A stretch of 63,973 bases of DNA, filler included, from Octopus bimaculoides (GCF_001194135.2; 5 parts of 5 records of this genome joined end to end with filler, not necessarily neighbours in it), one strand, 5' to 3'. Counted from the whole stretch's first letter, positions 54,360-63,973 are shown. The notes: generated by a model from the sequence alone, not told the origin. A program made the numbers and translations.

Positions 54360-54767
54360 GTAAGTATTAGACCATTTCTACATATTTTTCACATTCAATG
54401 TTGGTAATAACCTTAACTAATACCTTATGCTTTTGATCTTAGCTATGCTGGAGGAAAAAGGGCAAATATGTTAACTGCCGTGAAGCCAAGTAGATTTTTT
54501 ATCTGTACATATTGACTCAGACGGAGTCTATAATTTACAATATCTAATCTTTGATGACGTTAGTTTATTACATAAAATCTCATTCTGATAATATTCAGGG
54601 AACGGACAGTATGAAAACCTTTGGCGTTAGCATAACGTGTTGCATATATTGTTGTTATGAAGGAGAGTATAAAATGGAGGAAATATTCTGATAATTCTAA
54701 TTCTAAATGATACTACTGTAAAAATCATATATAAACGTAACCACTCGACTTCGGGGTCGAGTGGGCA

Positions 54768-56619
54768 TTGCACTTCATTTTTATCATTCTTTCATAATTT
54801 CATTCGTCACTTTTATCTTTTCTTCTTTACTCAATTTCCTTTTAGTAATTCTTAGTTCCCCGAATTTATGTTTTGTATTGTCTCTGTGTATTGTAAGGCA
54901 CCTCTATGTTGCTGGTGTGGGTAGTGTAAAAAAAATGAAAACTGTAGTCATTTTTGACCACAGTACGATAGAGGAAGGTTGTGTTTTTGAGACTTGCTAA
55001 TGATATTATTGTTACTATTACTGTTGAAGCGACTTTCACGTATTTGTTATTTACTACTATTATTGTTTTTTAGCTTTTTTCTCTCCATTGTGGGTGAGAA
55101 AAAATACTTAGCTTTTCCAGCATGGAAATCTATGCAAAGACGGCTCCAGCGAAAACAGCAATGCTGTTAGAGACGAGGCAAATAAAATTTGACTAGGAAA
55201 ATATTTTAAAAAGTGAACAACTTGTGCAGAAGGAGGGAGATACTATCAAGCCCCTCCCTCCACAGAAGAGGATGAAAGATAAGAGGGACAGGACGGTAAT
55301 GTATTGCACAGAAGCGGTCGTCACCAGCAAGATAGAAATATTTGTAGAGGAAGATATTGAGGAATGTCTGGGAGACATAATGAAGAAGGCTACTTTTATT
55401 GGCAGAGGAAGAAGATAGAGCACGGTGGAGGTGAGGTTTGCTACCAAAGAAGAGGCGGCCTCACATTCCATTACCATTCTGAGGTCGAGCGATGTAGCGC
55501 TGTTACCCGCGTATAGGGGAAGGCGCAGTGTTCGAGTCAGAGCAGCGGGAGTGCCAACCGATATCAAAACATAGTGGTTGGTGGCAACTATTTTGGCTGC
55601 CACTGAAGACAATCGGGAACGGGGACCGATAGGAGAGACAAAAGTGTTAAACTGCTGAGGATTCGGGGTCGAGATATGGCTTTTTGCCACATTTGAAGAC
55701 ATAGAGCGATTCCTCTACCAGATTGAGATTGCATTAAAAAATAAGCTGAAAGTTGTTGTAGAGGGACGTCGACCCAATTGTTATATATGCGGAGTGAGGG
55801 GTCACCTGAAGACACAGTGCCCCAAGTTCGAAGAGACTTAGAGCAAGAAAGTAGAGGAAAAAGAACAGGAAACGGAGATAGAAGAGAGAACTAAAACATA
55901 GAAAGAGAGAAGTGAAACAAGGGAAAACAAAAGCAATTTTTAGTGCATCAGTGACGAAAAAGTGAAAGAAAAGATTGAAGAGAAAGAGGCAAAGGAGGGG
56001 AGTGACTGGTTTGTCAGCCCCAAAACAAAAAAGAAAGAGAACATTGAACAGAAACCGAGAAGAAGCCGCAAAAAATATAGGGAACAACCTAAACCTAAAA
56101 ATATATAAGCAGTAGAAAGAAAAAACAACCGAAGAAGAATGAATGAATTATAAGGGCTTCCTGATAATCTACAAAAAGTGTGTGGAGGTGGAAAAAAGAA
56201 TAGCAAAATTGCAAGGACTTGTGAGGGTGAGGCTACCCAGAGAAGAATTTGAGGGAGATGATAAAGGAATTATGATGCAGGATGAAAGGTTTCATAGGTT
56301 TATGGACACAGTCGGTGGATCGGTATGTATGGTGGACAGGATATGGTTTCGTGATGCTCCGCCGTCTGTAATGGAATATGAGGAACTAACACGAATAGCA
56401 ATAGGAACAGTATAGAAAAAAAAAGATGATAAAAATGTGAACTTATTTGTTTGAAAAAAAAATAATGGGAAAAACTGCGCTTCATTTTTATCATTCTTTC
56501 ATCATATCATTCGTTTCTTTTCTTTTTTCTTCTTTACTCAATTTCATTTTTGTAAATTTCAGTTCCCCGAGCTTATGTTTTGTATTGTCTTTGTGTATTG
56601 TAAGGCACCTCTATGTAGC
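54768..56619 (+). mobile_element. Degenerate ORF1(gag-like)-only L1/Tx1-type element between 145-bp direct repeats
   Basis: Broken ORF with VEVRFATKEEA and SVRVRAAGVP segments and a CCHC knuckle CYICGVRGHLKTQC (55779-55820), with several stops and frameshifts. Direct repeats at 54768-54912 and 56475-56619. No RT seen. Confidence 0.75.
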
Positions 56620-57436
56620 CTTTATGGGTAATAAAACTAGAGGTCAGTTAGTGATGAGGGACATCTCTGAGAGCTGTGTATTACTTCATTTTGTTTGTGT
56701 TTAACGTGTTTCACCGAAAGGTTAGTTAATTAAAAATTGTTGCCTGCTTGCGGGATTTGTTATTGCCTTCTTGCAGGATTTGTTATTTGTTTTGTGGTTT
56801 CCCGTAAAGGAAACGTTGTTAAAATATTTTTTGTAAAATAATATCGTGAACTATTATCTTCCCCGAAGGCGGAAGGTTATATAAGATTTTTTATTGCGTT
56901 ACGGGGATTTTGTTAAATATAATTTGAACTGTGTTCCATTTCGGAACAATTGTTAAAAATATTCTTTCTGTGTTTTTTTAATATTGTTTTGTGTTTAAAA
57001 AAATACTGAATAATGTCTTCAAGTGAAGGAAAAAAAATGAATTTTGTCGCCGCTGTTGGTGGTTCTGAAATGATAACATTTCCAGACCTATTTTGGTATG
57101 ATAAGTGAGGAAAATGATGAGAGCAAAATAACTCCACCTAACAAACTAATAAATAAGACAACAGAAAAAAGCCATCATCTATAAATCTTATGATTTAGAA
57201 AAGAAGAAATTCTAACAACTAGAAGAGAGCACCGTTGAAAAGTGCTCGGGTCGGTAATAAAACGAATAAAATAGCCGACCTCACCGCCAACTTTCTCAAC
57301 AGGATCGCCATTATGCTCACCATCATCGTAATCTACTTTCATCTCTTCCGCTATCTCATTGTTTAACCATAATATTTAATATTCTGCCACAAATTTGTTC
57401 CATAAATGTTCTTCTTAACTCAATATTATATTGCAG

Positions 57437-57508
57437 GAATTTGGTATCTAACAACATCAAAGAAATAAAATCAGGAACTTTCCAAAATCTTTCCAATTTA
57501 ACATCTCT
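57437..57508 (+). CDS. LRR exon A (72 nt, phase 2/2): (L)NLVSNNIKEIKSGTFQNLSNLTS(L)
   Basis: ttgcAG acceptor and GTAAGT donor. Exactly 72 nt, in frame with the signal/LRRNT exon, and a typical 24-aa extracellular LRR. Confidence 0.92.
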
Positions 57509-58750
57509 GTAAGTTGAATCAATCTTCTTTTATATTATTTCGTTGAAGATATCTTTCTGAATCAGTAATGTTTTCCCATACTTCTATTTAAGCTGCATTC
57601 CCGTCTGTATATAGATGCGATTTATTTTTTCTTAAATGTTTGTGAATGTGAGCCTGGGTCCATTTTTGAGATAGGGCAAATATGGGAGGGTGATAACTGG
57701 GGAAATATCGATTGCATACACGTGTTACAGTTTATGGACGAGTGTATGCGAGTATATTAACATGTCTGTATAATATGTACGACACTAAATAACTTCCTTC
57801 AAGGACCCTTCTAGTTGTGTATTTAGCGCCAGATATTTCATACGCTAATTGTTAAACATATCTTTTACTTGTTGCTCTTCTTCCTCGTCTCCTTCTTCTT
57901 CCTTTCCCATTAACCCTAACTCCTCTACCAAACCATCATCATTACTCTGATCTTCATTAAGGTCATCGTTATCGTCACCATTCTCCTCATTTACTTCCAA
58001 TTTTTCTTTTAAATTTTCTTCCATCGCAATCTCTTCTTCTTCTTCTTCTTCTTCTTCTTCTTCTTCTTCTTCTTCTTCTTCTTCTTCTTCTTCCACCTCT
58101 TCTTCTTCTTCTTCTTCTTCTTCTTCTTCTTCTTCTTCTTCTTCTTCTTCTTCTTCCACCTCTTCTTCTTCTTCTTCTTCTTCTTCTTCTTCTTCTTCTT
58201 CTTCTTCTGCTTCTTCTTCTTCTTCTTCTTCTTCTTCTTCTTCTTCTTCTTCTTCTTCTTCTTTATTTGTTGCAATTCTTCCTTCTCTTCTTCATAATAT
58301 TTTTCAGTTTTCATTCTTCATATCCTGTTTATGTAATTGTTGTTTGTTGTTTTCCTTGTTGATATTGTCGTCGTCGTCGTCATCATCATCATCATCATCA
58401 TTTTGTTCCACATTCTTATCCTTATGTTTCTTCTCCTCTTCCTTCTTTTTATCATTGTTCTTGGTCCTCTTCTTTTACTTGTTTTTGTACTTTTCCTCCT
58501 TCGTTTCTTGTACGTCTTACGTATTATCATCTACTTTTACTTCACATCCTTTATTTATTCTCCGTCATCTTCATGTACTTCGTCTTCGTCTTCATTGCTT
58601 CTTCTTTTTCTTCTTCTTTTTCTTCTTCTTCTTCCTCCACCTCTTCTTCTTCTTCTTCTTCTTCTTCTTCTTCTTCTTTTCTTCTTCTTCGTCTTCATTT
58701 CTTCTTCTTCTTCTTCATATTGTTGTTGTTTTCTTGCTGTTCCTTTCTTT

Positions 58751-58795
<45 letters not shown>

Positions 58796-59277
58796 TATCA
58801 CTTTCTTCTGCTTTTGGATCTATTTCTGCTTCTTAACGTACTTCTCCATTTCATTGTAATTCTTCTTTTCCTCCTTCTTTTCTTCTAATTCGTCTTGCTC
58901 GTATTCTCATTCTTCTTGTGTCTCTTCTCCAACATCTTCTTATTCGTCTTCTTCTTCTTTTACTCCTTCTTCTTCTTCACATAATCGTCATCACAACAAA
59001 AGCTGCAAATCCGCATCGTTATCAAACTAAGTTAAATTAACATCATATCCCTATCATCAGCATCATATAACTTCGTTATCAAGACTCTCACAATATTTTT
59101 GTATCCTCTGCATCCTCATTACATTCATCACTCCACCCCACCAATCATTATCAACAAGACCGTCATGATGTTCATCATGATCATAATCTACATTTCATCT
59201 TTTCCATCATTCGATATAAAATAACCTCTCGCAAATTTGTTCCAAAATGTTCTTCTTGACTCAATTTTATGTTCCAG

Positions 59278-59349
59278 GATTTGGGGATTGAACGATATCA
59301 AAGAAATCAAAGCAGAAACCTTCCAAAATCTTTCCAGTTTAAAATTTCT
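59278..59349 (+). CDS. LRR exon B (72 nt): (L)IWGLNDIKEIKAETFQNLSSLKF(L)
   Basis: ttccAG acceptor and GTAAGT donor, 72 nt, paralogous to exon A. Has W at the normally conserved second L. Confidence 0.85.
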
Positions 59350-60224
59350 GTAAGTTGAATCAATCTCCTCTTACACTATTTCATTGAAGATATTTTTCTA
59401 AATCTGTAAGGTTTCAATTTAATGTCTACACCCGTCTTTCTATAGAGGTATTTCATTGTTATTGAACGTTTGTGAATGTGAGTATGGGCGCATTTTTGAG
59501 ATAGGGGGTATAGGAGCGTGATTATTGAGGAGAAACATTTATTGCATGCACGTGTTTCCGTTTATGGAAGAGTGAATGCAAGTGTATTAACATGTGTGTA
59601 TAATATGTACGGCATTTACCTTTAGATCGAAGCTAAATAAGTTCCTTGAATAAATATTCTTGCTGTGCATTTAGCACCAGATATTTCAAAACGCTAATTG
59701 TTAAACATATCTCCTACTTGCTGCTGTTGTCTTCTTCTTCGTTTCCTTTCAACTTTAACTCCTCCTCCGCGCCGTCATCATTAATGTGTGCAGAATATGT
59801 ACGGTCTTTACCTTTAGATCGACGCTGAATAACTTCTGTGAATAGCACTTCTAGTTGTGTATTTAGCACAAGATATTTCATACCCTAATTGTTGAACATT
59901 TTTCCTTGTTGTTATTCTTGTTCTTCTTCGTTTTCTTCCTCGTCTCCTTCTTCTTCCTTTCCCATTAACTTTAACTCGTCTACCAAACCATCATCATTTC
60001 TTCGTTCTTCATTTAGGTCATCGTTATCGTCACCATTCTCGTCATACTTCTTCCGCTTTTTCTTTAAAATTTTCTTCCATCACAATCTCCCCCTCCTCCT
60101 CCTCTTCTTCTTCTTCTTCTTCTTCTTCTTCTTCTTCTTCTTCTTCTTCTTCTTCTCGTTCTTCATCTTCTTCTTCTTTTTCTTCTTCTTTTTCTTCTTC
60201 TTCTTTTTCTTCTTCTTCTTCTTT

Positions 60225-60267
<43 letters not shown>

Positions 60268-60328
60268 CCTTCGTCTATTTTCATGTCTTCTACGTCGTCT
60301 TCACATTCTTCTTCTTTTTCTTCTTCTT

Positions 60329-60375
<47 letters not shown>

Positions 60376-60685
60376 TCTTCACTTGTTCATCATCACAACA
60401 AACCTGCGAGTCCACATCGTGTTCACAGTAATCAAAATTAACATCATCTTCGTATCACCTACCTTTATCAAGATTCTCACAATATTCCCATTTCCTCTGT
60501 CTCGTCTTTATATTCATCTCAGACTTCCATCACACCGTTTACATTATCAACAAGTTCGTCATGATGTTCATCAGCATCGTAATCTATTTTTCATCTCTTT
60601 CTTTATCTCATTCTTTAGCCATAATATTTATTATTCTGTCACAAATTTGTTCCATAAATGTTCTTGACTGAATTTTATTTTCCAG

Positions 60686-60757
60686 GTATTTGGGTTTTAA
60701 TCATATCAAAGAGATCAAAGTAGAAACATTCCAAAATCTTTCCAATTTAAGAATTCT
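60686..60757 (+). CDS. LRR exon C (72 nt): (L)YLGFNHIKEIKVETFQNLSNLRI(L)
   Basis: ttccAG acceptor, GTAAGT donor, 72 nt, canonical LRR. Confidence 0.92.
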
Positions 60758-61211
60758 GTAAGTTGAATCAATCTTCTTTCATAATGTTTCATTGACGATA
60801 TCTATGTAAATGTGTACGTGTTTTCCCATACATGAATTTAATGTCCACTCCCACCTCTCTATAGATGCATTTTATAGTTTTTGAATGTTTATGAATGTGA
60901 GGCTGGGCCCATTTTTGATAAAGGGGATATATGGGAGCGTGGTTATTGAGGGGAGACATCTATTGCATACACGTGTCTTCGTTTATGGACAAGTGTATGC
61001 AAATGTATTATTATCATATGTGTATAACATGTACGGCATTTACCTTTAGATCGACACTAAATAACTTCCTCGAATAACCGTTCTAATTGTGTATTTAACA
61101 CCAGCTATTTCATATGCTAATTCTTAAACAAATCTTTTACTTGCTGTTTCCTTTCCCTTCAACCATCATCACAACTTAGATCTTAATTTAGCTCATCTAG
61201 TAACATCAACA

Positions 61212-61538
61212 CCAACAAGTAGGAGATATGTTTAACAATTAGCGCATGAAATATCTGGTGCTAAATGCACAGCAAGAAGATTTATTCAAGGAAGTTATCT
61301 AGCTTCGATCTAAAGATAAATGCCGTACATATTATGCACACATGTTAATACACTTGCATTCACTCTTCCATAAACGGAGACATGTGCATGCAATAGATGT
61401 TTCCCCTCAATGATCACGCTCCTATATAACCCTTATCTCAAAAATGCGTTTTATTCGTTTTATTACCGGCTCCAGACACTTTTCAACGGTGCTCTATTCT
61501 AGGTATTATAATCTCTTCTTTTCTAAAACATAAGCTTT
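61212..61538 (-). repeat. Inverted, exon-less copy of cassette intron sequence
   Basis: 61215-61448 is the reverse complement of 59489-59722 (roughly 90% by eye) and, less closely, of 60908-61143. 61449-61538 is the reverse complement of 57183-57271. Confidence 0.9.
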
Positions 61539-61776
61539 ACATTTTCTTGTAAACTTTTTCTAGCACATTCTTCTTCTTCTTCTTCTTCTTCTTCTTCTTC
61601 TTCTTCTTCTTCTTCTTCTTCTTCTTCTTCTTCTTCTTCTTCTTCTTCTTCTTCTTCTTCTTCTTCTTCTTCTTCTTCTTCTTCTTCTTCTTCTTCTTCT
61701 TCTTCTTCTTTCTCCTACTCCTATTCTTCTTCTCCTTGTTATTGTTGTTGTTGTTGTTGTTATTATTATTATTGTT

Positions 61777-62126
61777 CAGTAGTTTTATTTTTATAACGTG
61801 CTTTCACTTCACTACCGAGCGCAGCTCTGTGCGCCTTGGGTATGTGCTGTGGTTTGCTGTGGTGCTCTAATGGTTACTGTATTGAAAGTGTTTTGCGTAG
61901 TATGTGTGCAGTGCCCAGTAGTGCAATTTTCTGTATGTTATATATATTTGTAAGTCCTGGTGTTTTTGTTATGTATTTGTCTGAATATTGTTTTATTATA
62001 CCTAAGGCATCTACTATGATACGAATTGTTTCTGTTTTTAGATTCCACATTCGAGTTACCTCTATTTCGAGGTCTTTGTATTTTGAAAGTTTTTCCGTTT
62101 CTTTTAGAGAAACGTTGTCATCTGCT
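61777..62126 (-). mobile_element. Young R4/Dong-like LINE 3' end in the intron between LRR exons C and D
   Basis: KETEKLSKYKDLEIEVTRMWNLK...ALGII...QKIALLGTAHILRKTLSIQ*. About 5 differences in about 230 nt from the 49821 copy. (TTA)n on both sides of element+gap. Confidence 0.88.
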
Positions 62127-62580
62127 NNNNNNNNNNNNNNNNNNNNNNNNNNNNNNNNNNNNNNNNNNNNNNNNNNNNNNNNNNNNNNNNNNNNNNNNNN
62201 NNNNNNNNNNNNNNNNNNNNNNNNNNNNNNNNNNNNNNNNNNNNNNNNNNNNNNNNNNNNNNNNNNNNNNNNNNNNNNNNNNNNNNNNNNNNNNNNNNNN
62301 NNNNNNNNNNNNNNNNNNNNNNNNNNNNNNNNNNNNNNNNNNNNNNNNNNNNNNNNNNNNNNNNNNNNNNNNNNNNNNNNNNNNNNNNNNNNNNNNNNNN
62401 NNNNNNNNNNNNNNNNNNNNNNNNNNNNNNNNNNNNNNNNNNNNNNNNNNNNNNNNNNNNNNNNNNNNNNNNNNNNNNNNNNNNNNNNNNNNNNNNNNNN
62501 NNNNNNNNNNNNNNNNNNNNNNNNNNNNNNNNNNNNNNNNNNNNNNNNNNNNNNNNNNNNNNNNNNNNNNNNNNNNNNNN

Positions 62581-62644
<64 letters not shown>

Positions 62645-62822
62645 TATTAATAATAATAATAAGCTTCATATTCTTCCTATTCTTTCCCTTTCTTCATGTT
62701 TTTTGGAATTCTTCTGCCACTTCTACTTTCTCTACTTTTTCTCTTCTTCTACTCCATCTTCTACTCCTTCGCCTCCATTACTCCTCCACCTACTTCTCCT
62801 CCTCTTCCTGCTGCTGCTGCTG

Positions 62823-62868
<46 letters not shown>

Positions 62869-63387
62869 CTTGTCTCTTCTCATTCTTTTTCTTCCGCTTC
62901 TTTACCTCCTTGTCCTTGTCTCGTCCTTTTCTATTAATTCTTCCTCTCCTTCTTCTTCTTCTTCTGCTTTTTGTTCTCCATCTTTTTCTCAATTCTGTCC
63001 TTCACCACCATCTGCTTGTTTTTCGTGATGTTTTTGTTGTTGTTGTTCTTCTTCTTCTTCTTCTTCTTCTTCTTCTTCTTCTTCTTCTTCTTCTTCTTCT
63101 TCTTCTTCTTCTTCTTCTTCTTCTTCTTCTTCTTCTTCTTCTTTCTTCACTATCTTCCCAATCTCCTCTTCATTTTTTGTCCTTTTCTTCTTCTTCACCA
63201 TTTTCATCACTACCATCACCATCAACTCTACCGCCATTATTATTTCCCCTTCCTATTCTTCCTCCTCCTCCTTCTGCTTTTGTTCTTTCTCATCATTATC
63301 ATCAACAGCATCATCATCGTCATCACCTTTGTATTATTCATCTCATGTTATACACAATCTCTTATTAACTCAATTTTATGTTCCCAG

Positions 63388-63459
63388 AGATTTGAGAGAT
63401 AATGACATCAATGAAATCAAAGCAGACACTTTTCGAAATCTGTCCAGTTTAGAATATCT
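63388..63459 (+). CDS. LRR exon D (72 nt): (L)DLRDNDINEIKADTFRNLSSLEY(L); gene continues beyond the window
   Basis: tcccAG acceptor, GTAAGT donor, 72 nt, canonical LRR. No stop codon is reached within the window. Confidence 0.92.
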
Positions 63460-63973
63460 GTAAGTTTAATCGGTTTTCCTTTTTTAGTATTTCATAGAAG
63501 ATATATTTCTAAATCTGTAATATCTTCCAATATATCACTTTAATCTCATTTACTCGTTTTTCAAAGGTGTGTTTATTGCTTACGAAACCGTGTGTATGCC
63601 CGTTTCTAAGGTATGGAATATATGAGAGCAAGATACTTCGGGGAAAATATTTTGCGCACGTATCCCTATGCGTAAAATCTCTCTGCGCGATGGGAGTGTT
63701 AATGTATTGTAATGTCTGTGAATGTGTGTGAGAACTAATTCCACACAATTGTTATATAAGTGTGTGTACCAATTAAAACTGTCACTTAGTCAAATGTCTG
63801 TCATTTTGTGTATGGACGTGTGCATGAGAATATATCAACATGTATGTGTAATTCGTTCCCTATACGATATACGGTGATTACGTTTGCATGACCACTGATT
63901 ATCGTCCTAGAGGTCTCTTCTTGTACTACTTGTTGTTATCGTTGTTGTTTTTGTTTCTTCTTCTTCTTCTTCT

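What the first reader, a model, noticed from the sequence alone, without database searches (positions are those of the whole stretch)
61212..61538. Inverted exon-less cassette copy that can base-pair across LRR exons (splicing, circRNA or editing switch?)
Seen: 61215-61448 is the reverse complement of intron sequence 59489-59722 (best match, bracketing exon C) and of the adjacent 60908-61143 (local hairpin, about 70-nt loop). 61449-61538 is the reverse complement of 57183-57271, upstream of exon A. One inverted block therefore has three alternative pairing partners, looping out nothing, exon C, or exons A-C. Established: competing intronic RNA pairings control exon choice in Dscam-type arrays, flanking inverted repeats promote exon skipping and circRNA, and long dsRNA is an ADAR substrate, with A-to-I editing extensive in coleoids. 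Inference: the structure may generate isoforms with different LRR numbers. It may equally be a neutral inversion by-product.
Basis: partly seen in the sequence, partly recalled or inferred. Interest (0 to 1): 0.75.

Follow-up and report, generated by a model that had tools for sequence, protein, structure and literature searches.

The report
Inverted intron copy in octopus LRR gene
A 333-base stretch inside an intron of an octopus leucine-rich-repeat gene is a real, back-to-front patchwork copy of two nearby intron pieces that should fold the pre-mRNA into long double-stranded RNA, but it looks like a young, species-specific copying accident rather than a conserved splicing switch.

Summary
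61207-61448 is the reverse complement of 59489-59729 (92%, E 2e-98). It also matches 60910-61146 (82%), 57661-57874 (76%) and 59784-59913 (82%). 61449-61539 is the reverse complement of 57182-57271 (88%).

The setting is a + strand octopus "LRRC4-like" gene. It has exon 1 (signal peptide plus LRRNT) and four 72-nt, same-phase LRR exons. Three of them (A, B, C) lie in tandem 1.4-1.8 kb cassettes about 82% alike.

The block is an insertion of about 340 nt into cassette C. It was copied from cassette B's downstream intron and from a piece upstream of exon A, after A, B and C had diverged.

Predicted RNA duplexes are very large (-277, -173, -158, -93 and -79 kcal/mol). In the full-length fold the exon-C-spanning and exon-A-to-C-spanning helices form together and stack.

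Nothing points to selection. The closest Octopus sinensis locus has no inverted block, although its annotated isoforms already drop single LRR exons. Mismatches show no G·U excess. Two unrelated long palindromes lie in the same 25 kb.

Best reading: a neutral templated inverted insertion that makes an intronic dsRNA, most likely an ADAR hyper-editing substrate. Any effect on splicing is untested.

The parts
54178..54359 (+). Exon 1 coding part: signal peptide plus cysteine-rich LRR N-cap (MFHQFKLTFVLVFYMSFCLESQAVSVICRICECRNSQTNIVCLSRGLTSVPQPIPSNVEYL). The donor gtaagt starts at 54360.
   Evidence: Sequence; translation. It is 59-64% identical to the O. sinensis LRRC4-like proteins. Pfam finds LRR_8 at E 1e-24 for the joined exons.
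57182..57271 (+). a': intron-1 segment 165 nt upstream of exon A, partner of the second part of the block (inv2). There is one forward copy only; cassettes B, C and D lack it.
   Evidence: (I7), 5, 6: 87.9% over 91 nt with 61539-61449. Cofold ddG -79 kcal/mol, 81 bp. No match in L001 or L002.
57437..57508 (+). LRR exon A (72 nt, ag|...|gtaagt, same phase): LNLVSNNIKEIKSGTFQNLSNLTSL.
57661..57874 (+). A_down: cassette A copy of the downstream-intron segment; weaker partner of inv1.
   Evidence: 76.5% over 234 nt. ddG -158 kcal/mol, 189 bp.
59278..59349 (+). LRR exon B (72 nt): LIWGLNDIKEIKAETFQNLSSLKFL. It has W where the repeat consensus has L.
   Evidence: sequence.
59489..59729 (+). B_down: donor lineage and best partner of inv1. 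It starts 139 nt after the exon B donor.
   Evidence: 92.2% over 243 nt. 93.2% on the multiple alignment, with 7 derived states shared only with the block. ddG -277 kcal/mol, 231 bp. It pairs in the MFE of the whole region and of every transcript prefix from 61240 on.
59784..59913 (+). B_dup: internal tandem duplicate of part of B_down; fifth partner.
   Evidence: 59592-59748 vs 59784-59937, 79.6%. (82.3% over 130 nt with 61343-61214). ddG -93 kcal/mol.
60686..60757 (+). LRR exon C (72 nt): LYLGFNHIKEIKVETFQNLSNLRIL. It is the exon enclosed by the B_down x inv1 duplex.
60910..61146 (+). C_down: same-intron partner of inv1. It forms a local hairpin with a 66-nt spacer.
   Evidence: 81.9% over 237 nt. 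Fold of 60880-61560: -302.5 kcal/mol, z -31 against shuffles. ddG -173 kcal/mol.
61207..61448 (+). inv1: reverse complement of the cassette downstream-intron segment, of the B lineage.
61449..61539 (+). inv2: reverse complement of a'. It is joined to inv1 with no shared bases at the junction (ATGCG|TTTTATTCG).
61198..61541 (+). The whole inserted block inside cassette C. Forward homology of C to A and B stops at 61197 and resumes at 61537-61542; about 27-35 nt of the cassette were replaced.
   Evidence: local alignments to A 57892-57967 / 57995-58043 and B 59949-60022 / 60058-60097.
61570..61710 (+). (CTT)n tract of about 47 units directly after the block. Similar tracts fill all cassette introns.
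   Evidence: Sequence; families D1-D7.
61757..62126 (.). Dispersed repeat (transposon fragment) running into the N gap; independent of the block.
   Evidence: 85-92% copies at window 49802-50053, L001 30234-30602 and 25895-26220, and L002 6259-6480. Homology starts at the (TTG)n(TTA)n run, more than 200 nt after the block.
63388..63459 (+). LRR exon D (72 nt): LDLRDNDINEIKADTFRNLSSLEYL. The gene is cut off by the end of the piece.

Best explanation
The block is a young, lineage-specific templated insertion. About 340 nt were copied in reverse orientation from two nearby intronic templates and set into the intron after LRR exon C. The templates were the segment downstream of exon B and a 90-nt piece upstream of exon A.

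Origin (inferred). The likeliest route is replication template switching or break repair with templated synthesis, in a fast-turning-over tandem array of LRR-exon cassettes full of long (CTT)n tracts. The alternative route is an inverted duplication of 57182-59729 followed by a 2.2-kb internal deletion.

Consequence for the RNA (computed). The primary transcript contains perfectly placed complementary arms.
- By energy, the block pairs with B_down (231 bp) and a' (about 80 bp) at once. This gives one long interrupted stem. Exon C sits in a 1.5-kb apical loop, and exons A and B sit in a 2.2-kb bulge.
- By proximity, it can instead snap back on C_down, 66 nt away, to give a 235-bp imperfect hairpin that encloses no exon.

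Consequence for the cell (inferred from established knowledge). Such intronic inverted-repeat dsRNA is the standard ADAR hyper-editing substrate, and it is unusually abundant in octopus. It may also shift exon A-C inclusion or back-splicing somewhat.

I see no sign that this is a selected function. The block is best regarded as a neutral by-product.
For: Shown:
1. The matches are real and specific to the array.
2. The block interrupts cassette C, whose homology to A and B resumes right after it.
3. Its first part is sister to B_down: 93.2% against 81.7% (A) and 82.0% (C). Seven derived states are shared only by B and the block, polarised with O. sinensis. It therefore arose after the A/B/C triplication (about 82% alike) and long after the split from the O. 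sinensis copy (about 75%).
4. The second part (88.9% of 90 nt) has a compatible age.
5. Two templates 2.2 kb apart, both inverted and both retained, are joined bluntly. The outer junctions carry possible 3-5 nt microhomologies.
6. The O. sinensis locus L001 is collinear with window 51812-56657 at 76-86% and shares the intron-1 retroelement. No intron of it holds an inverted cassette fragment, and neither does O. bimaculoides L002.
7. There is no G·U over A·C excess in any arm pair.
9. Two unrelated long palindromes lie in the same 25 kb.
10. Octopus has an exceptionally high fraction of loci able to form long near-perfect dsRNA, and the strongest hyper-editing signal (PMC5625713).
Against: - No RNA-seq, long-read or population data could be reached, so a real effect on splicing is not excluded.
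- The layout (one complementary site downstream of the cluster, one partner after each duplicated exon) is the one used by known competing-structure systems (PMC6071210).
- Cassette orthology between the window and O. sinensis is many-to-many, and the source species is unidentified. Absence in other species therefore rests on one related locus, which may be a close paralogue.
- The wobble test has little power (12-27 transition mismatches per pair).
- Survival of 330 nt at 88-93% identity could reflect youth or constraint.
Confidence: 0.7

Rival explanations
1. Docking-site/selector switch. The block acts as a single docking site downstream of the cassette cluster. The copies after exons A, B and C act as competing selectors. 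Which one pairs decides how many LRR exons are looped out, giving regulated isoforms with 1-4 repeats.
For: - The geometry fits: one site is complementary to a segment 139-152 nt downstream of each cassette exon.
- Pairings to inv1 exclude each other.
- All exons are 72 nt and in the same phase, so any skip stays in frame.
- Downstream docking sites are known for Dscam exon 4/9, 14-3-3zeta, Mhc and MRP1 (PMC6071210).
- The O. sinensis relative has annotated isoforms differing by one LRR exon.
Against: - The block is absent from the O. sinensis locus, which shows the isoforms anyway.
- It is young and B-derived.
- There is no wobble bias.
- Arms of 130-240 bp differ by about 100 kcal/mol, so no thermodynamic balance exists. 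The B_down pairing wins from the first ~35 nt transcribed.
- No splice signal lies inside an arm.
- No transcript or protein of this gene, in any isoform, is in the 5.8-billion-cluster protein collection.
Confidence: 0.1
2. Old fold-back hairpin, later homogenised. The inverted arm arose first, as a snap-back copy next to a single ancestral cassette. The cassette plus one arm was then duplicated (the Ivanov-Pervouchine route to competing structures). Gene conversion between inverted copies later made the block look B-like.
For: - This route is proposed in the literature (PMC6071210).
- The block sits 66 nt from a forward copy, like a classical fold-back.
- Inverted repeats 1.5 kb apart can undergo gene conversion (general knowledge).
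Against: - The B-like states run along the whole 240 nt with no mosaic. Where B differs from the block, the block keeps the ancestral state seen in C and O. sinensis, as a simple B-sister tree predicts.
- The block interrupts cassette C rather than ending the array.
- O. sinensis has forward copies only.
Confidence: 0.08
3. A mobile element: the block is a foldback or MITE-like transposon, or was carried in by the neighbouring transposon.
For: - A dispersed repeat lies about 200 nt downstream.
- A 4-nt ACAT occurs at both edges of the block.
- Two other palindromic elements are in the piece.
Against: - Both halves are copies of local, cassette-specific intron DNA that is also present forward in O. 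sinensis cassettes.
- No other copies exist in the 25-kb piece or in 58 kb of related octopus DNA.
- The neighbouring repeat's homology starts at 61757, not at the block.
- There are no terminal inverted repeats within the block itself.
- A 4-nt match is expected by chance.
Confidence: 0.03
4. Assembly artefact: a strand-switch mis-join in a repeat-rich short-read scaffold.
For: The scaffold has N gaps (one at 62127-62580) and is rich in microsatellites.
Against: - The block lies inside a gap-free stretch, 50920-62126.
- It differs from its nearest template by 7% and from a' by 12%. A graph mis-traversal would give identical sequence.
- The cassette homology resumes cleanly after it.
Confidence: 0.02

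Closest known systems
Docking-site/selector competing RNA structures of mutually exclusive exon clusters (Dscam1 exon 4/9, 14-3-3zeta, Mhc, MRP1 type, with the docking site downstream of the cluster; PMC6071210)
   Same: - A tandem array of equal-length duplicated exons.
- One intronic site downstream of the array is complementary to a segment next to each duplicated exon.
- Pairings to that site exclude each other and would loop out different sets of exons.
   Different: - Arms are 130-240 bp of near-identical duplicated DNA, not short conserved motifs.
- Strengths differ by about 100 kcal/mol.
- There is no cross-species conservation or compensatory signal.
- The exons are additive repeats, all includable, not one-of-many.
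- The complementary site arose after the exon duplications, by inverted copying.
- A second, compatible helix (a' x inv2) has no counterpart.
Intronic inverted-repeat dsRNA (inverted Alu-type pairs): ADAR hyper-editing substrates and promoters of exon circularisation or skipping (PMC5625713; PMC4201285)
   Same: - Two inverted copies of the same sequence within a few kb in one transcription unit.
- A long, nearly perfect predicted duplex.
- Within-intron and across-exon pairings compete.
- Octopus is especially rich in such loci.
   Different: - The repeats are local cassette intron DNA, not a dispersed transposon family.
- The enclosed exons are tiny (72 nt; 216 nt for A+B+C), a size range that circularised poorly in the ZKSCAN1 system.
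- Editing and back-splicing are untested here.
Templated insertions and complex rearrangements by replication template switching (FoSTeS/MMBIR) or polymerase-theta end joining (named from my own knowledge)
   Same: - Short segments copied from templates within a few kb.
- Inverted orientation.
- More than one template joined.
- Templates retained.
- A small deletion at the target.
- Short or no microhomology at the junctions.
- The site lies next to structure-forming (CTT)n repeats.
   Different: The event is old (7-12% divergence), so the junction microhomologies cannot be read with confidence. An inverted duplication followed by an internal deletion gives the same end product.
Ivanov-Pervouchine model for the birth of competing structures by duplicating an exon with one arm of a stem-loop (PMC6071210)
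   Same: The end state is several duplicated arms competing for one complementary arm beside a tandem exon array.
   Different: The order of events is reversed. The arms were duplicated first (about 82% alike). The complementary arm was then made from one of them (93% to B), as shown.

Membership tests
Docking-site/selector competing RNA structure system | Cluster of tandemly duplicated alternative exons of similar length and sequence | tested here: met
   Exons A, B, C and D are each 72 nt, in the same phase, 71-82% identical, and lie in 1.4-1.8 kb cassettes.
Docking-site/selector competing RNA structure system | One docking site complementary to a selector next to each alternative exon, with the pairings mutually exclusive | tested here: met
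   inv1 (61207-61448) is complementary to A_down, B_down, B_dup and C_down. The a' x inv2 helix, however, is compatible with them.
Docking-site/selector competing RNA structure system | Docking site and selectors conserved between species, with pairing-preserving changes | tested here: not met
   There is no inverted copy in the collinear O. sinensis locus or in the O. bimaculoides paralogue. G·U vs A·C counts are 7:5, 13:14 and 2:2. Caveats: only one related locus was available, and orthology of individual cassettes is unclear.
Docking-site/selector competing RNA structure system | One and only one exon of the cluster (or a regulated subset) included in mature mRNA | not testable with these tools
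   No transcript data were reachable. No protein of this gene is in the collection. The related O. sinensis gene shows single-cassette skipping in annotated isoforms, not one-of-many choice.
Docking-site/selector competing RNA structure system | Alternative pairings of comparable strength, so that the choice can vary | tested here: not met
   ddG is -277 (B_down), -173 (C_down), -158 (A_down) and -93 (B_dup) kcal/mol. B_down wins in every prefix fold from 61240 on.
Intronic inverted-repeat dsRNA (ADAR hyper-editing / circRNA-promoting type) | Two inverted copies of one sequence within the same primary transcript, a few kb apart or less | tested here: met
   All arms lie between exon 1 and exon D on the + strand, 66 nt to 4.2 kb apart. 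That the region is transcribed as one unit is inferred from the exon structure.
Intronic inverted-repeat dsRNA (ADAR hyper-editing / circRNA-promoting type) | Long, nearly perfect predicted duplex, far more stable than shuffled sequence | tested here: met
   231 bp at -277 kcal/mol. The local hairpin is -302.5 kcal/mol with z -31.
Intronic inverted-repeat dsRNA (ADAR hyper-editing / circRNA-promoting type) | Clustered A-to-G mismatches in RNA reads over the arms, or back-splice junction reads | not testable with these tools
   No RNA-seq access.
Templated insertion by template switching / break repair | Inserted DNA is a copy of nearby sequence that is still present at its original place | tested here: met
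   Templates at 59489-59729 and 57182-57271 are retained. The insert interrupts cassette C.
Templated insertion by template switching / break repair | Microhomology at the junctions | tested here: inconclusive
   The inner junction is blunt (ATGCG|TTTT). The outer junctions have possible ATC and TTTAC overlaps, but 7-12% later divergence blurs them.
Leucine-rich repeat protein (host gene) | LRR motifs and an N-terminal cysteine cap recognised by profile | tested here: met
   Pfam LRR_8 at E 1.4e-24, plus LRR_4, LRR_5 and LRR_1. The closest named proteins are O. sinensis 'leucine-rich repeat-containing protein 4-like'. The name is the annotator's; no relationship to vertebrate LRRC4 was tested.

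The most novel reading that the evidence does not exclude
This could be a docking-site/selector system caught at birth. An inverted templated insertion, made after tandem exon duplication, has in one step given an octopus LRR gene a single downstream site that competes for a partner behind each duplicated LRR exon. It would already shift how many LRR repeats the mRNA carries (1-A-D, 1-A-B-D, 1-D or circular A-B-C), perhaps modulated by ADAR unwinding of the duplex. That would be a route to competing RNA structures opposite in order to the published duplication model. It would also be the first such system in a mollusc, as far as my own knowledge goes; I did not check this against the literature.
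Probability: 0.1. Interest if true: 0.6.

Novelty: new member of a known kind. Interest (0 to 1): 0.28.

Why it matters
If the block were functional, it would show how competing-structure control of duplicated exons can arise in a single mutational step. It would also link that control to repeat-number variation in a recognition-type LRR protein, in an animal with exceptionally active RNA editing.

As the evidence stands, it mainly illustrates two ordinary things:
- Tandem LRR-exon cassette arrays embedded in (CTT)n tracts turn over quickly and pick up local rearrangements.
- Octopus introns are rich in inverted repeats that should feed ADAR.

It is a clean, well-delimited candidate for anyone holding octopus RNA-seq who wants a test case of across-exon versus within-intron pairing.

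Tried and rejected
1. Finding the window's own genome, or other individuals, by exact look-up of window ORFs (60885-61049 +, 55193-55702 -). Nothing is on record. The locus of P0004 was also not retrievable. Species identity and polymorphism therefore stay unknown.
2. A protein search with the joined exons. There was no hit above 64% identity, so no annotated or assembled product of this gene in any isoform. My query used a hand translation of exon B that was off by a compensated 1-nt shift (DLG instead of IWG). This does not affect the result.
3. Rfam scan of 54000-63973: no family.
4. First comparisons with L001 mixed two loci, because /data/L001.fa holds both L001 and L002. They were redone per locus. 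One search, a repeat finder on L002, agrees with the per-locus redo.
5. Staggered-break inversion model (inverted duplications flanking an inverted segment). Rejected: the sequences next to a' and inv2 are not inverted copies of each other, and exons A-C are in gene orientation.
6. Transposon carriage by the downstream repeat. Rejected: its homology starts more than 200 nt after the block.
7. Short inverted repeats flanking the skipped exons in O. sinensis. Only (TTA)n/(TAA)n microsatellite pairs inside one intron turned up.
8. Literature searches for octopus LRR expansions and cephalopod circRNA gave nothing specific.

Full report
**1. The observation**

- 61207-61448 is the reverse complement of 59489-59729 (92.2% over 243 nt, 3 gaps, E 2e-98).
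- 61213-61446 is the reverse complement of 60910-61146 (81.9%, E 1e-63), with 66 nt between the arms.
- 61449-61539 is the reverse complement of 57182-57271 (87.9% over 91 nt, E 3e-27).

Two partners were missed: 57661-57874 (76.5%) and 59784-59913 (82.3%). No other copy exists in 38324-63973. The block lies in a gap-free stretch and differs from every partner by 7-12%, so it is not a mis-join of identical sequence.

**2. The setting**

The + strand carries a secreted-type LRR gene.
- Exon 1 (54178-54359) encodes a signal peptide and a cysteine-rich N-cap.
- Four 72-nt exons follow: A 57437-57508, B 59278-59349, C 60686-60757 and D 63388-63459.
- Each exon is bounded by ag|...|gtaagt, each encodes one 24-residue repeat, and all are in the same phase.
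- Pfam recognises LRR_8 at E 1e-24.

Exons A, B and C sit in tandem cassettes, with boundaries read: A 57282-59137, B 59138-60532, C from 60533. The cassettes are 70-83% alike overall and about 82% alike in the segment in question. The rest of each intron is mostly (CTT)n and similar microsatellites.

The closest proteins are Octopus sinensis 'leucine-rich repeat-containing protein 4-like' X1 (157 aa) and X2/X3 (133 aa), at 59-64% identity. X2 and X3 each lack one 24-residue repeat of X1.

**3. Anatomy and origin of the block**

A multiple alignment of all copies, with two O. sinensis copies as outgroup, was made and counted.
- The inverted segment is 93.2% identical to B_down, but 81.7% to A_down and 82.0% to C_down.
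- A, B and C are 82-83% alike. All window copies are about 74-75% identical to O. sinensis.
- Seven derived states are shared by B_down and the block alone.
- Where B_down and the block differ, the block usually keeps the state seen in C and O. sinensis. There is no mosaic suggesting conversion tracts.

The first part was therefore copied from the B lineage after the cassette triplication.

Local alignments show that cassette C's forward homology to A and B runs to 61197 and resumes at 61537-61542. About 27-35 nt of the cassette are missing. The block is thus an insertion of about 340 nt into cassette C.

- The inner junction is blunt (…CTCAAAAATGCG|TTTTATTCG…).
- The outer junctions have possible ATC and TTTAC overlaps.

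In forward orientation the insert reads a' followed directly by B_down. That is the 57182-59729 interval minus its central 2.2 kb, which holds exons A and B.

Inference: the block arose either by a two-step template switch during replication or break repair, or by an inverted duplication followed by an internal deletion. A 47-unit (CTT)n tract directly follows the block. I know such tracts to stall replication, and I cite that only as plausibility.

**4. Not a mobile element, not a known RNA**

- The dispersed repeat downstream starts at about 61757, at a (TTG)n(TTA)n run. It has copies elsewhere in the window and in both related loci, and it does not reach the block.
- Neither half of the block occurs elsewhere in 58 kb of related octopus DNA, except as forward cassette copies.
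- Rfam finds nothing.

**5. What the RNA would do (computed)**

Two-strand folds give these gains over the separately folded arms:

| Pair | ddG (kcal/mol) | Intermolecular bp |
|---|---|---|
| B_down x inv1 | -277 | 231 |
| C_down x inv1 | -173 | 206 |
| A_down x inv1 | -158 | 189 |
| B_dup x inv1 | -93 | 127 |
| a' x inv2 | -79 | 81 |

- The MFE fold of 57100-61620 (-943 kcal/mol) contains B_down x inv1 (230 bp) and a' x inv2 (77 bp) together.
- Because inv1 and inv2 abut, the two helices stack into one interrupted stem. Exon C sits in the 1.5-kb apical loop, and exons A and B sit in a 2.2-kb bulge.
- Prefix folds from 59350 show B_down pairing once about 35 nt of the block exist.
- If the B-C intron is already gone, or if nearest-neighbour kinetics dominate, the block folds on C_down: -302.5 kcal/mol, z -31.
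- No splice site lies inside an arm. The arms start 139-165 nt from the nearest exon edge.

Energy and proximity thus point to different partners. All of these duplexes are effectively irreversible without helicases or ADAR. The outcome would be set by timing, not by a balanced equilibrium.

**6. Tests for function**

(a) Conservation.
- O. sinensis contig L001 is collinear with window 51812-56657 at 76-86%. This includes exon 1 (82%) and the same retroelement remnant in intron 1.
- Its LRR cassettes carry only forward copies of the segment. The only inverted self-match inside that gene is an unrelated 155-nt palindrome.
- The O. bimaculoides paralogue L002 has none either.
- Cassette correspondence is many-to-many, so this is absence in the nearest available relative, not a strict orthologous-site test.

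(b) Pairing-preserving substitutions. In the sense RNA, G·U versus A·C mismatches are 7:5 (B_down), 13:14 (C_down), 13:7 (A_down), 8:3 (B_dup) and 2:2 (a'). There is no clear excess in the main pairs, but the test has low power.

(c) Necessity. The O. sinensis gene has annotated isoforms that skip single LRR exons without any such block.

(d) Background. Two unrelated long palindromes lie in the same 25 kb. Porath et al. report that octopus has an exceptionally high fraction of loci forming long near-perfect dsRNA, and the strongest hyper-editing signal (PMC5625713).

(e) Expression. No protein matching this gene in any isoform is in the protein collection. This is weak negative evidence only.

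**7. Comparison with known systems**

- The layout resembles downstream-docking-site competing structures (PMC6071210). It fails the conservation and comparable-strength criteria, and the exons are additive rather than mutually exclusive.
- The order of events (arms first, complementary site later) is the reverse of the Ivanov-Pervouchine duplication model.
- It fits the inverted-repeat intronic dsRNA class in every feature that could be tested.
- For circRNA, short inverted repeats suffice in principle, but exons of 400 nt or less circularised poorly in the ZKSCAN1 system (PMC4201285). Here the enclosed exons total 72-216 nt.

**8. Verdict**

The most likely explanation is a neutral, lineage-specific templated inverted insertion that creates an intronic dsRNA (confidence about 0.7). 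ADAR hyper-editing is the expected consequence, and any splicing effect would be incidental. A nascent docking/selector switch is not excluded (about 0.1) and would be testable with ordinary RNA-seq and a minigene.

Noticed in passing
window 41053-41476 and 44226-44605: Two other long hairpin-forming palindromes, unrelated to the LRR array. The first is 89% self-complementary over 431 nt (core arms 41138-41242 / 41283-41387, 96%, 40-nt spacer). The second has 160-nt arms at 81% with a 60-nt spacer. They are possibly foldback or MITE-type elements.
   Followed up: partly
window 54769-56630 (intron 1); L001 10028-11896: A retroelement remnant with a CCHC zinc knuckle (CYICGVRGHLKTQC, 55755-55838 +) lies between 155-nt direct repeats 54769-54923 / 56476-56630 (87%). 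The same arrangement is in the O. sinensis locus at 72-86% identity, which argues that the two loci are orthologous or very close paralogues.
   Followed up: partly
L001 34970-36089; L002 11915; window 63459-63463: All annotated proteins of this octopus family (157, 133 and 86 aa) end exactly at an LRR exon edge, at the TAA inside the unspliced donor CTG|TAAGT. L001 has a fifth intact cassette exon (36018-36089) beyond the annotated stop. The gene models are therefore probably truncated and the real proteins longer.
   Followed up: partly
window 59278-59349 (exon B): Exon B reads LIWGLNDI…, with W where the LRR consensus has a core Leu. This comes from a compensated 1-nt shift relative to exons A and C. 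It may be a decaying or atypical repeat.
   Followed up: no
window exons A-D and flanks (57337-57648, 59178-59489, 60586-60897, 63288-63599): Cassette exons are no better conserved than their flanking introns (71-82% vs 72-88%), and differences fall on all codon positions. This suggests relaxed or diversifying evolution of the repeats, or that splice-flanking intron is itself constrained.
   Followed up: partly
window 61757-62126 and 49802-50053; L001 30234-30602, 25895-26220; L002 6259-6480: A dispersed repeat family (85-92% between copies) whose edge is a (TTG)n(TTA)n run. It is probably a retroposon with a microsatellite tail on the minus strand. In the window it runs into the N gap.
   Followed up: partly
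window 59592-59748 vs 59784-59937: An internal tandem duplication (79.6%) inside cassette B duplicates part of the downstream-intron segment. It shows that the array keeps rearranging at sub-cassette scale.
   Followed up: yes
L001 132-4453: The O. sinensis contig starts with about nine tandem copies of a ~493-nt unit at 97% identity (a satellite-like array), upstream of the LRR gene.
   Followed up: no
window 52223-52516 (-): A short ORF with a weak reverse-transcriptase match (RVT_1, E 0.001, below Pfam's cut-off). It is probably a LINE fragment upstream of the gene.
   Followed up: partly
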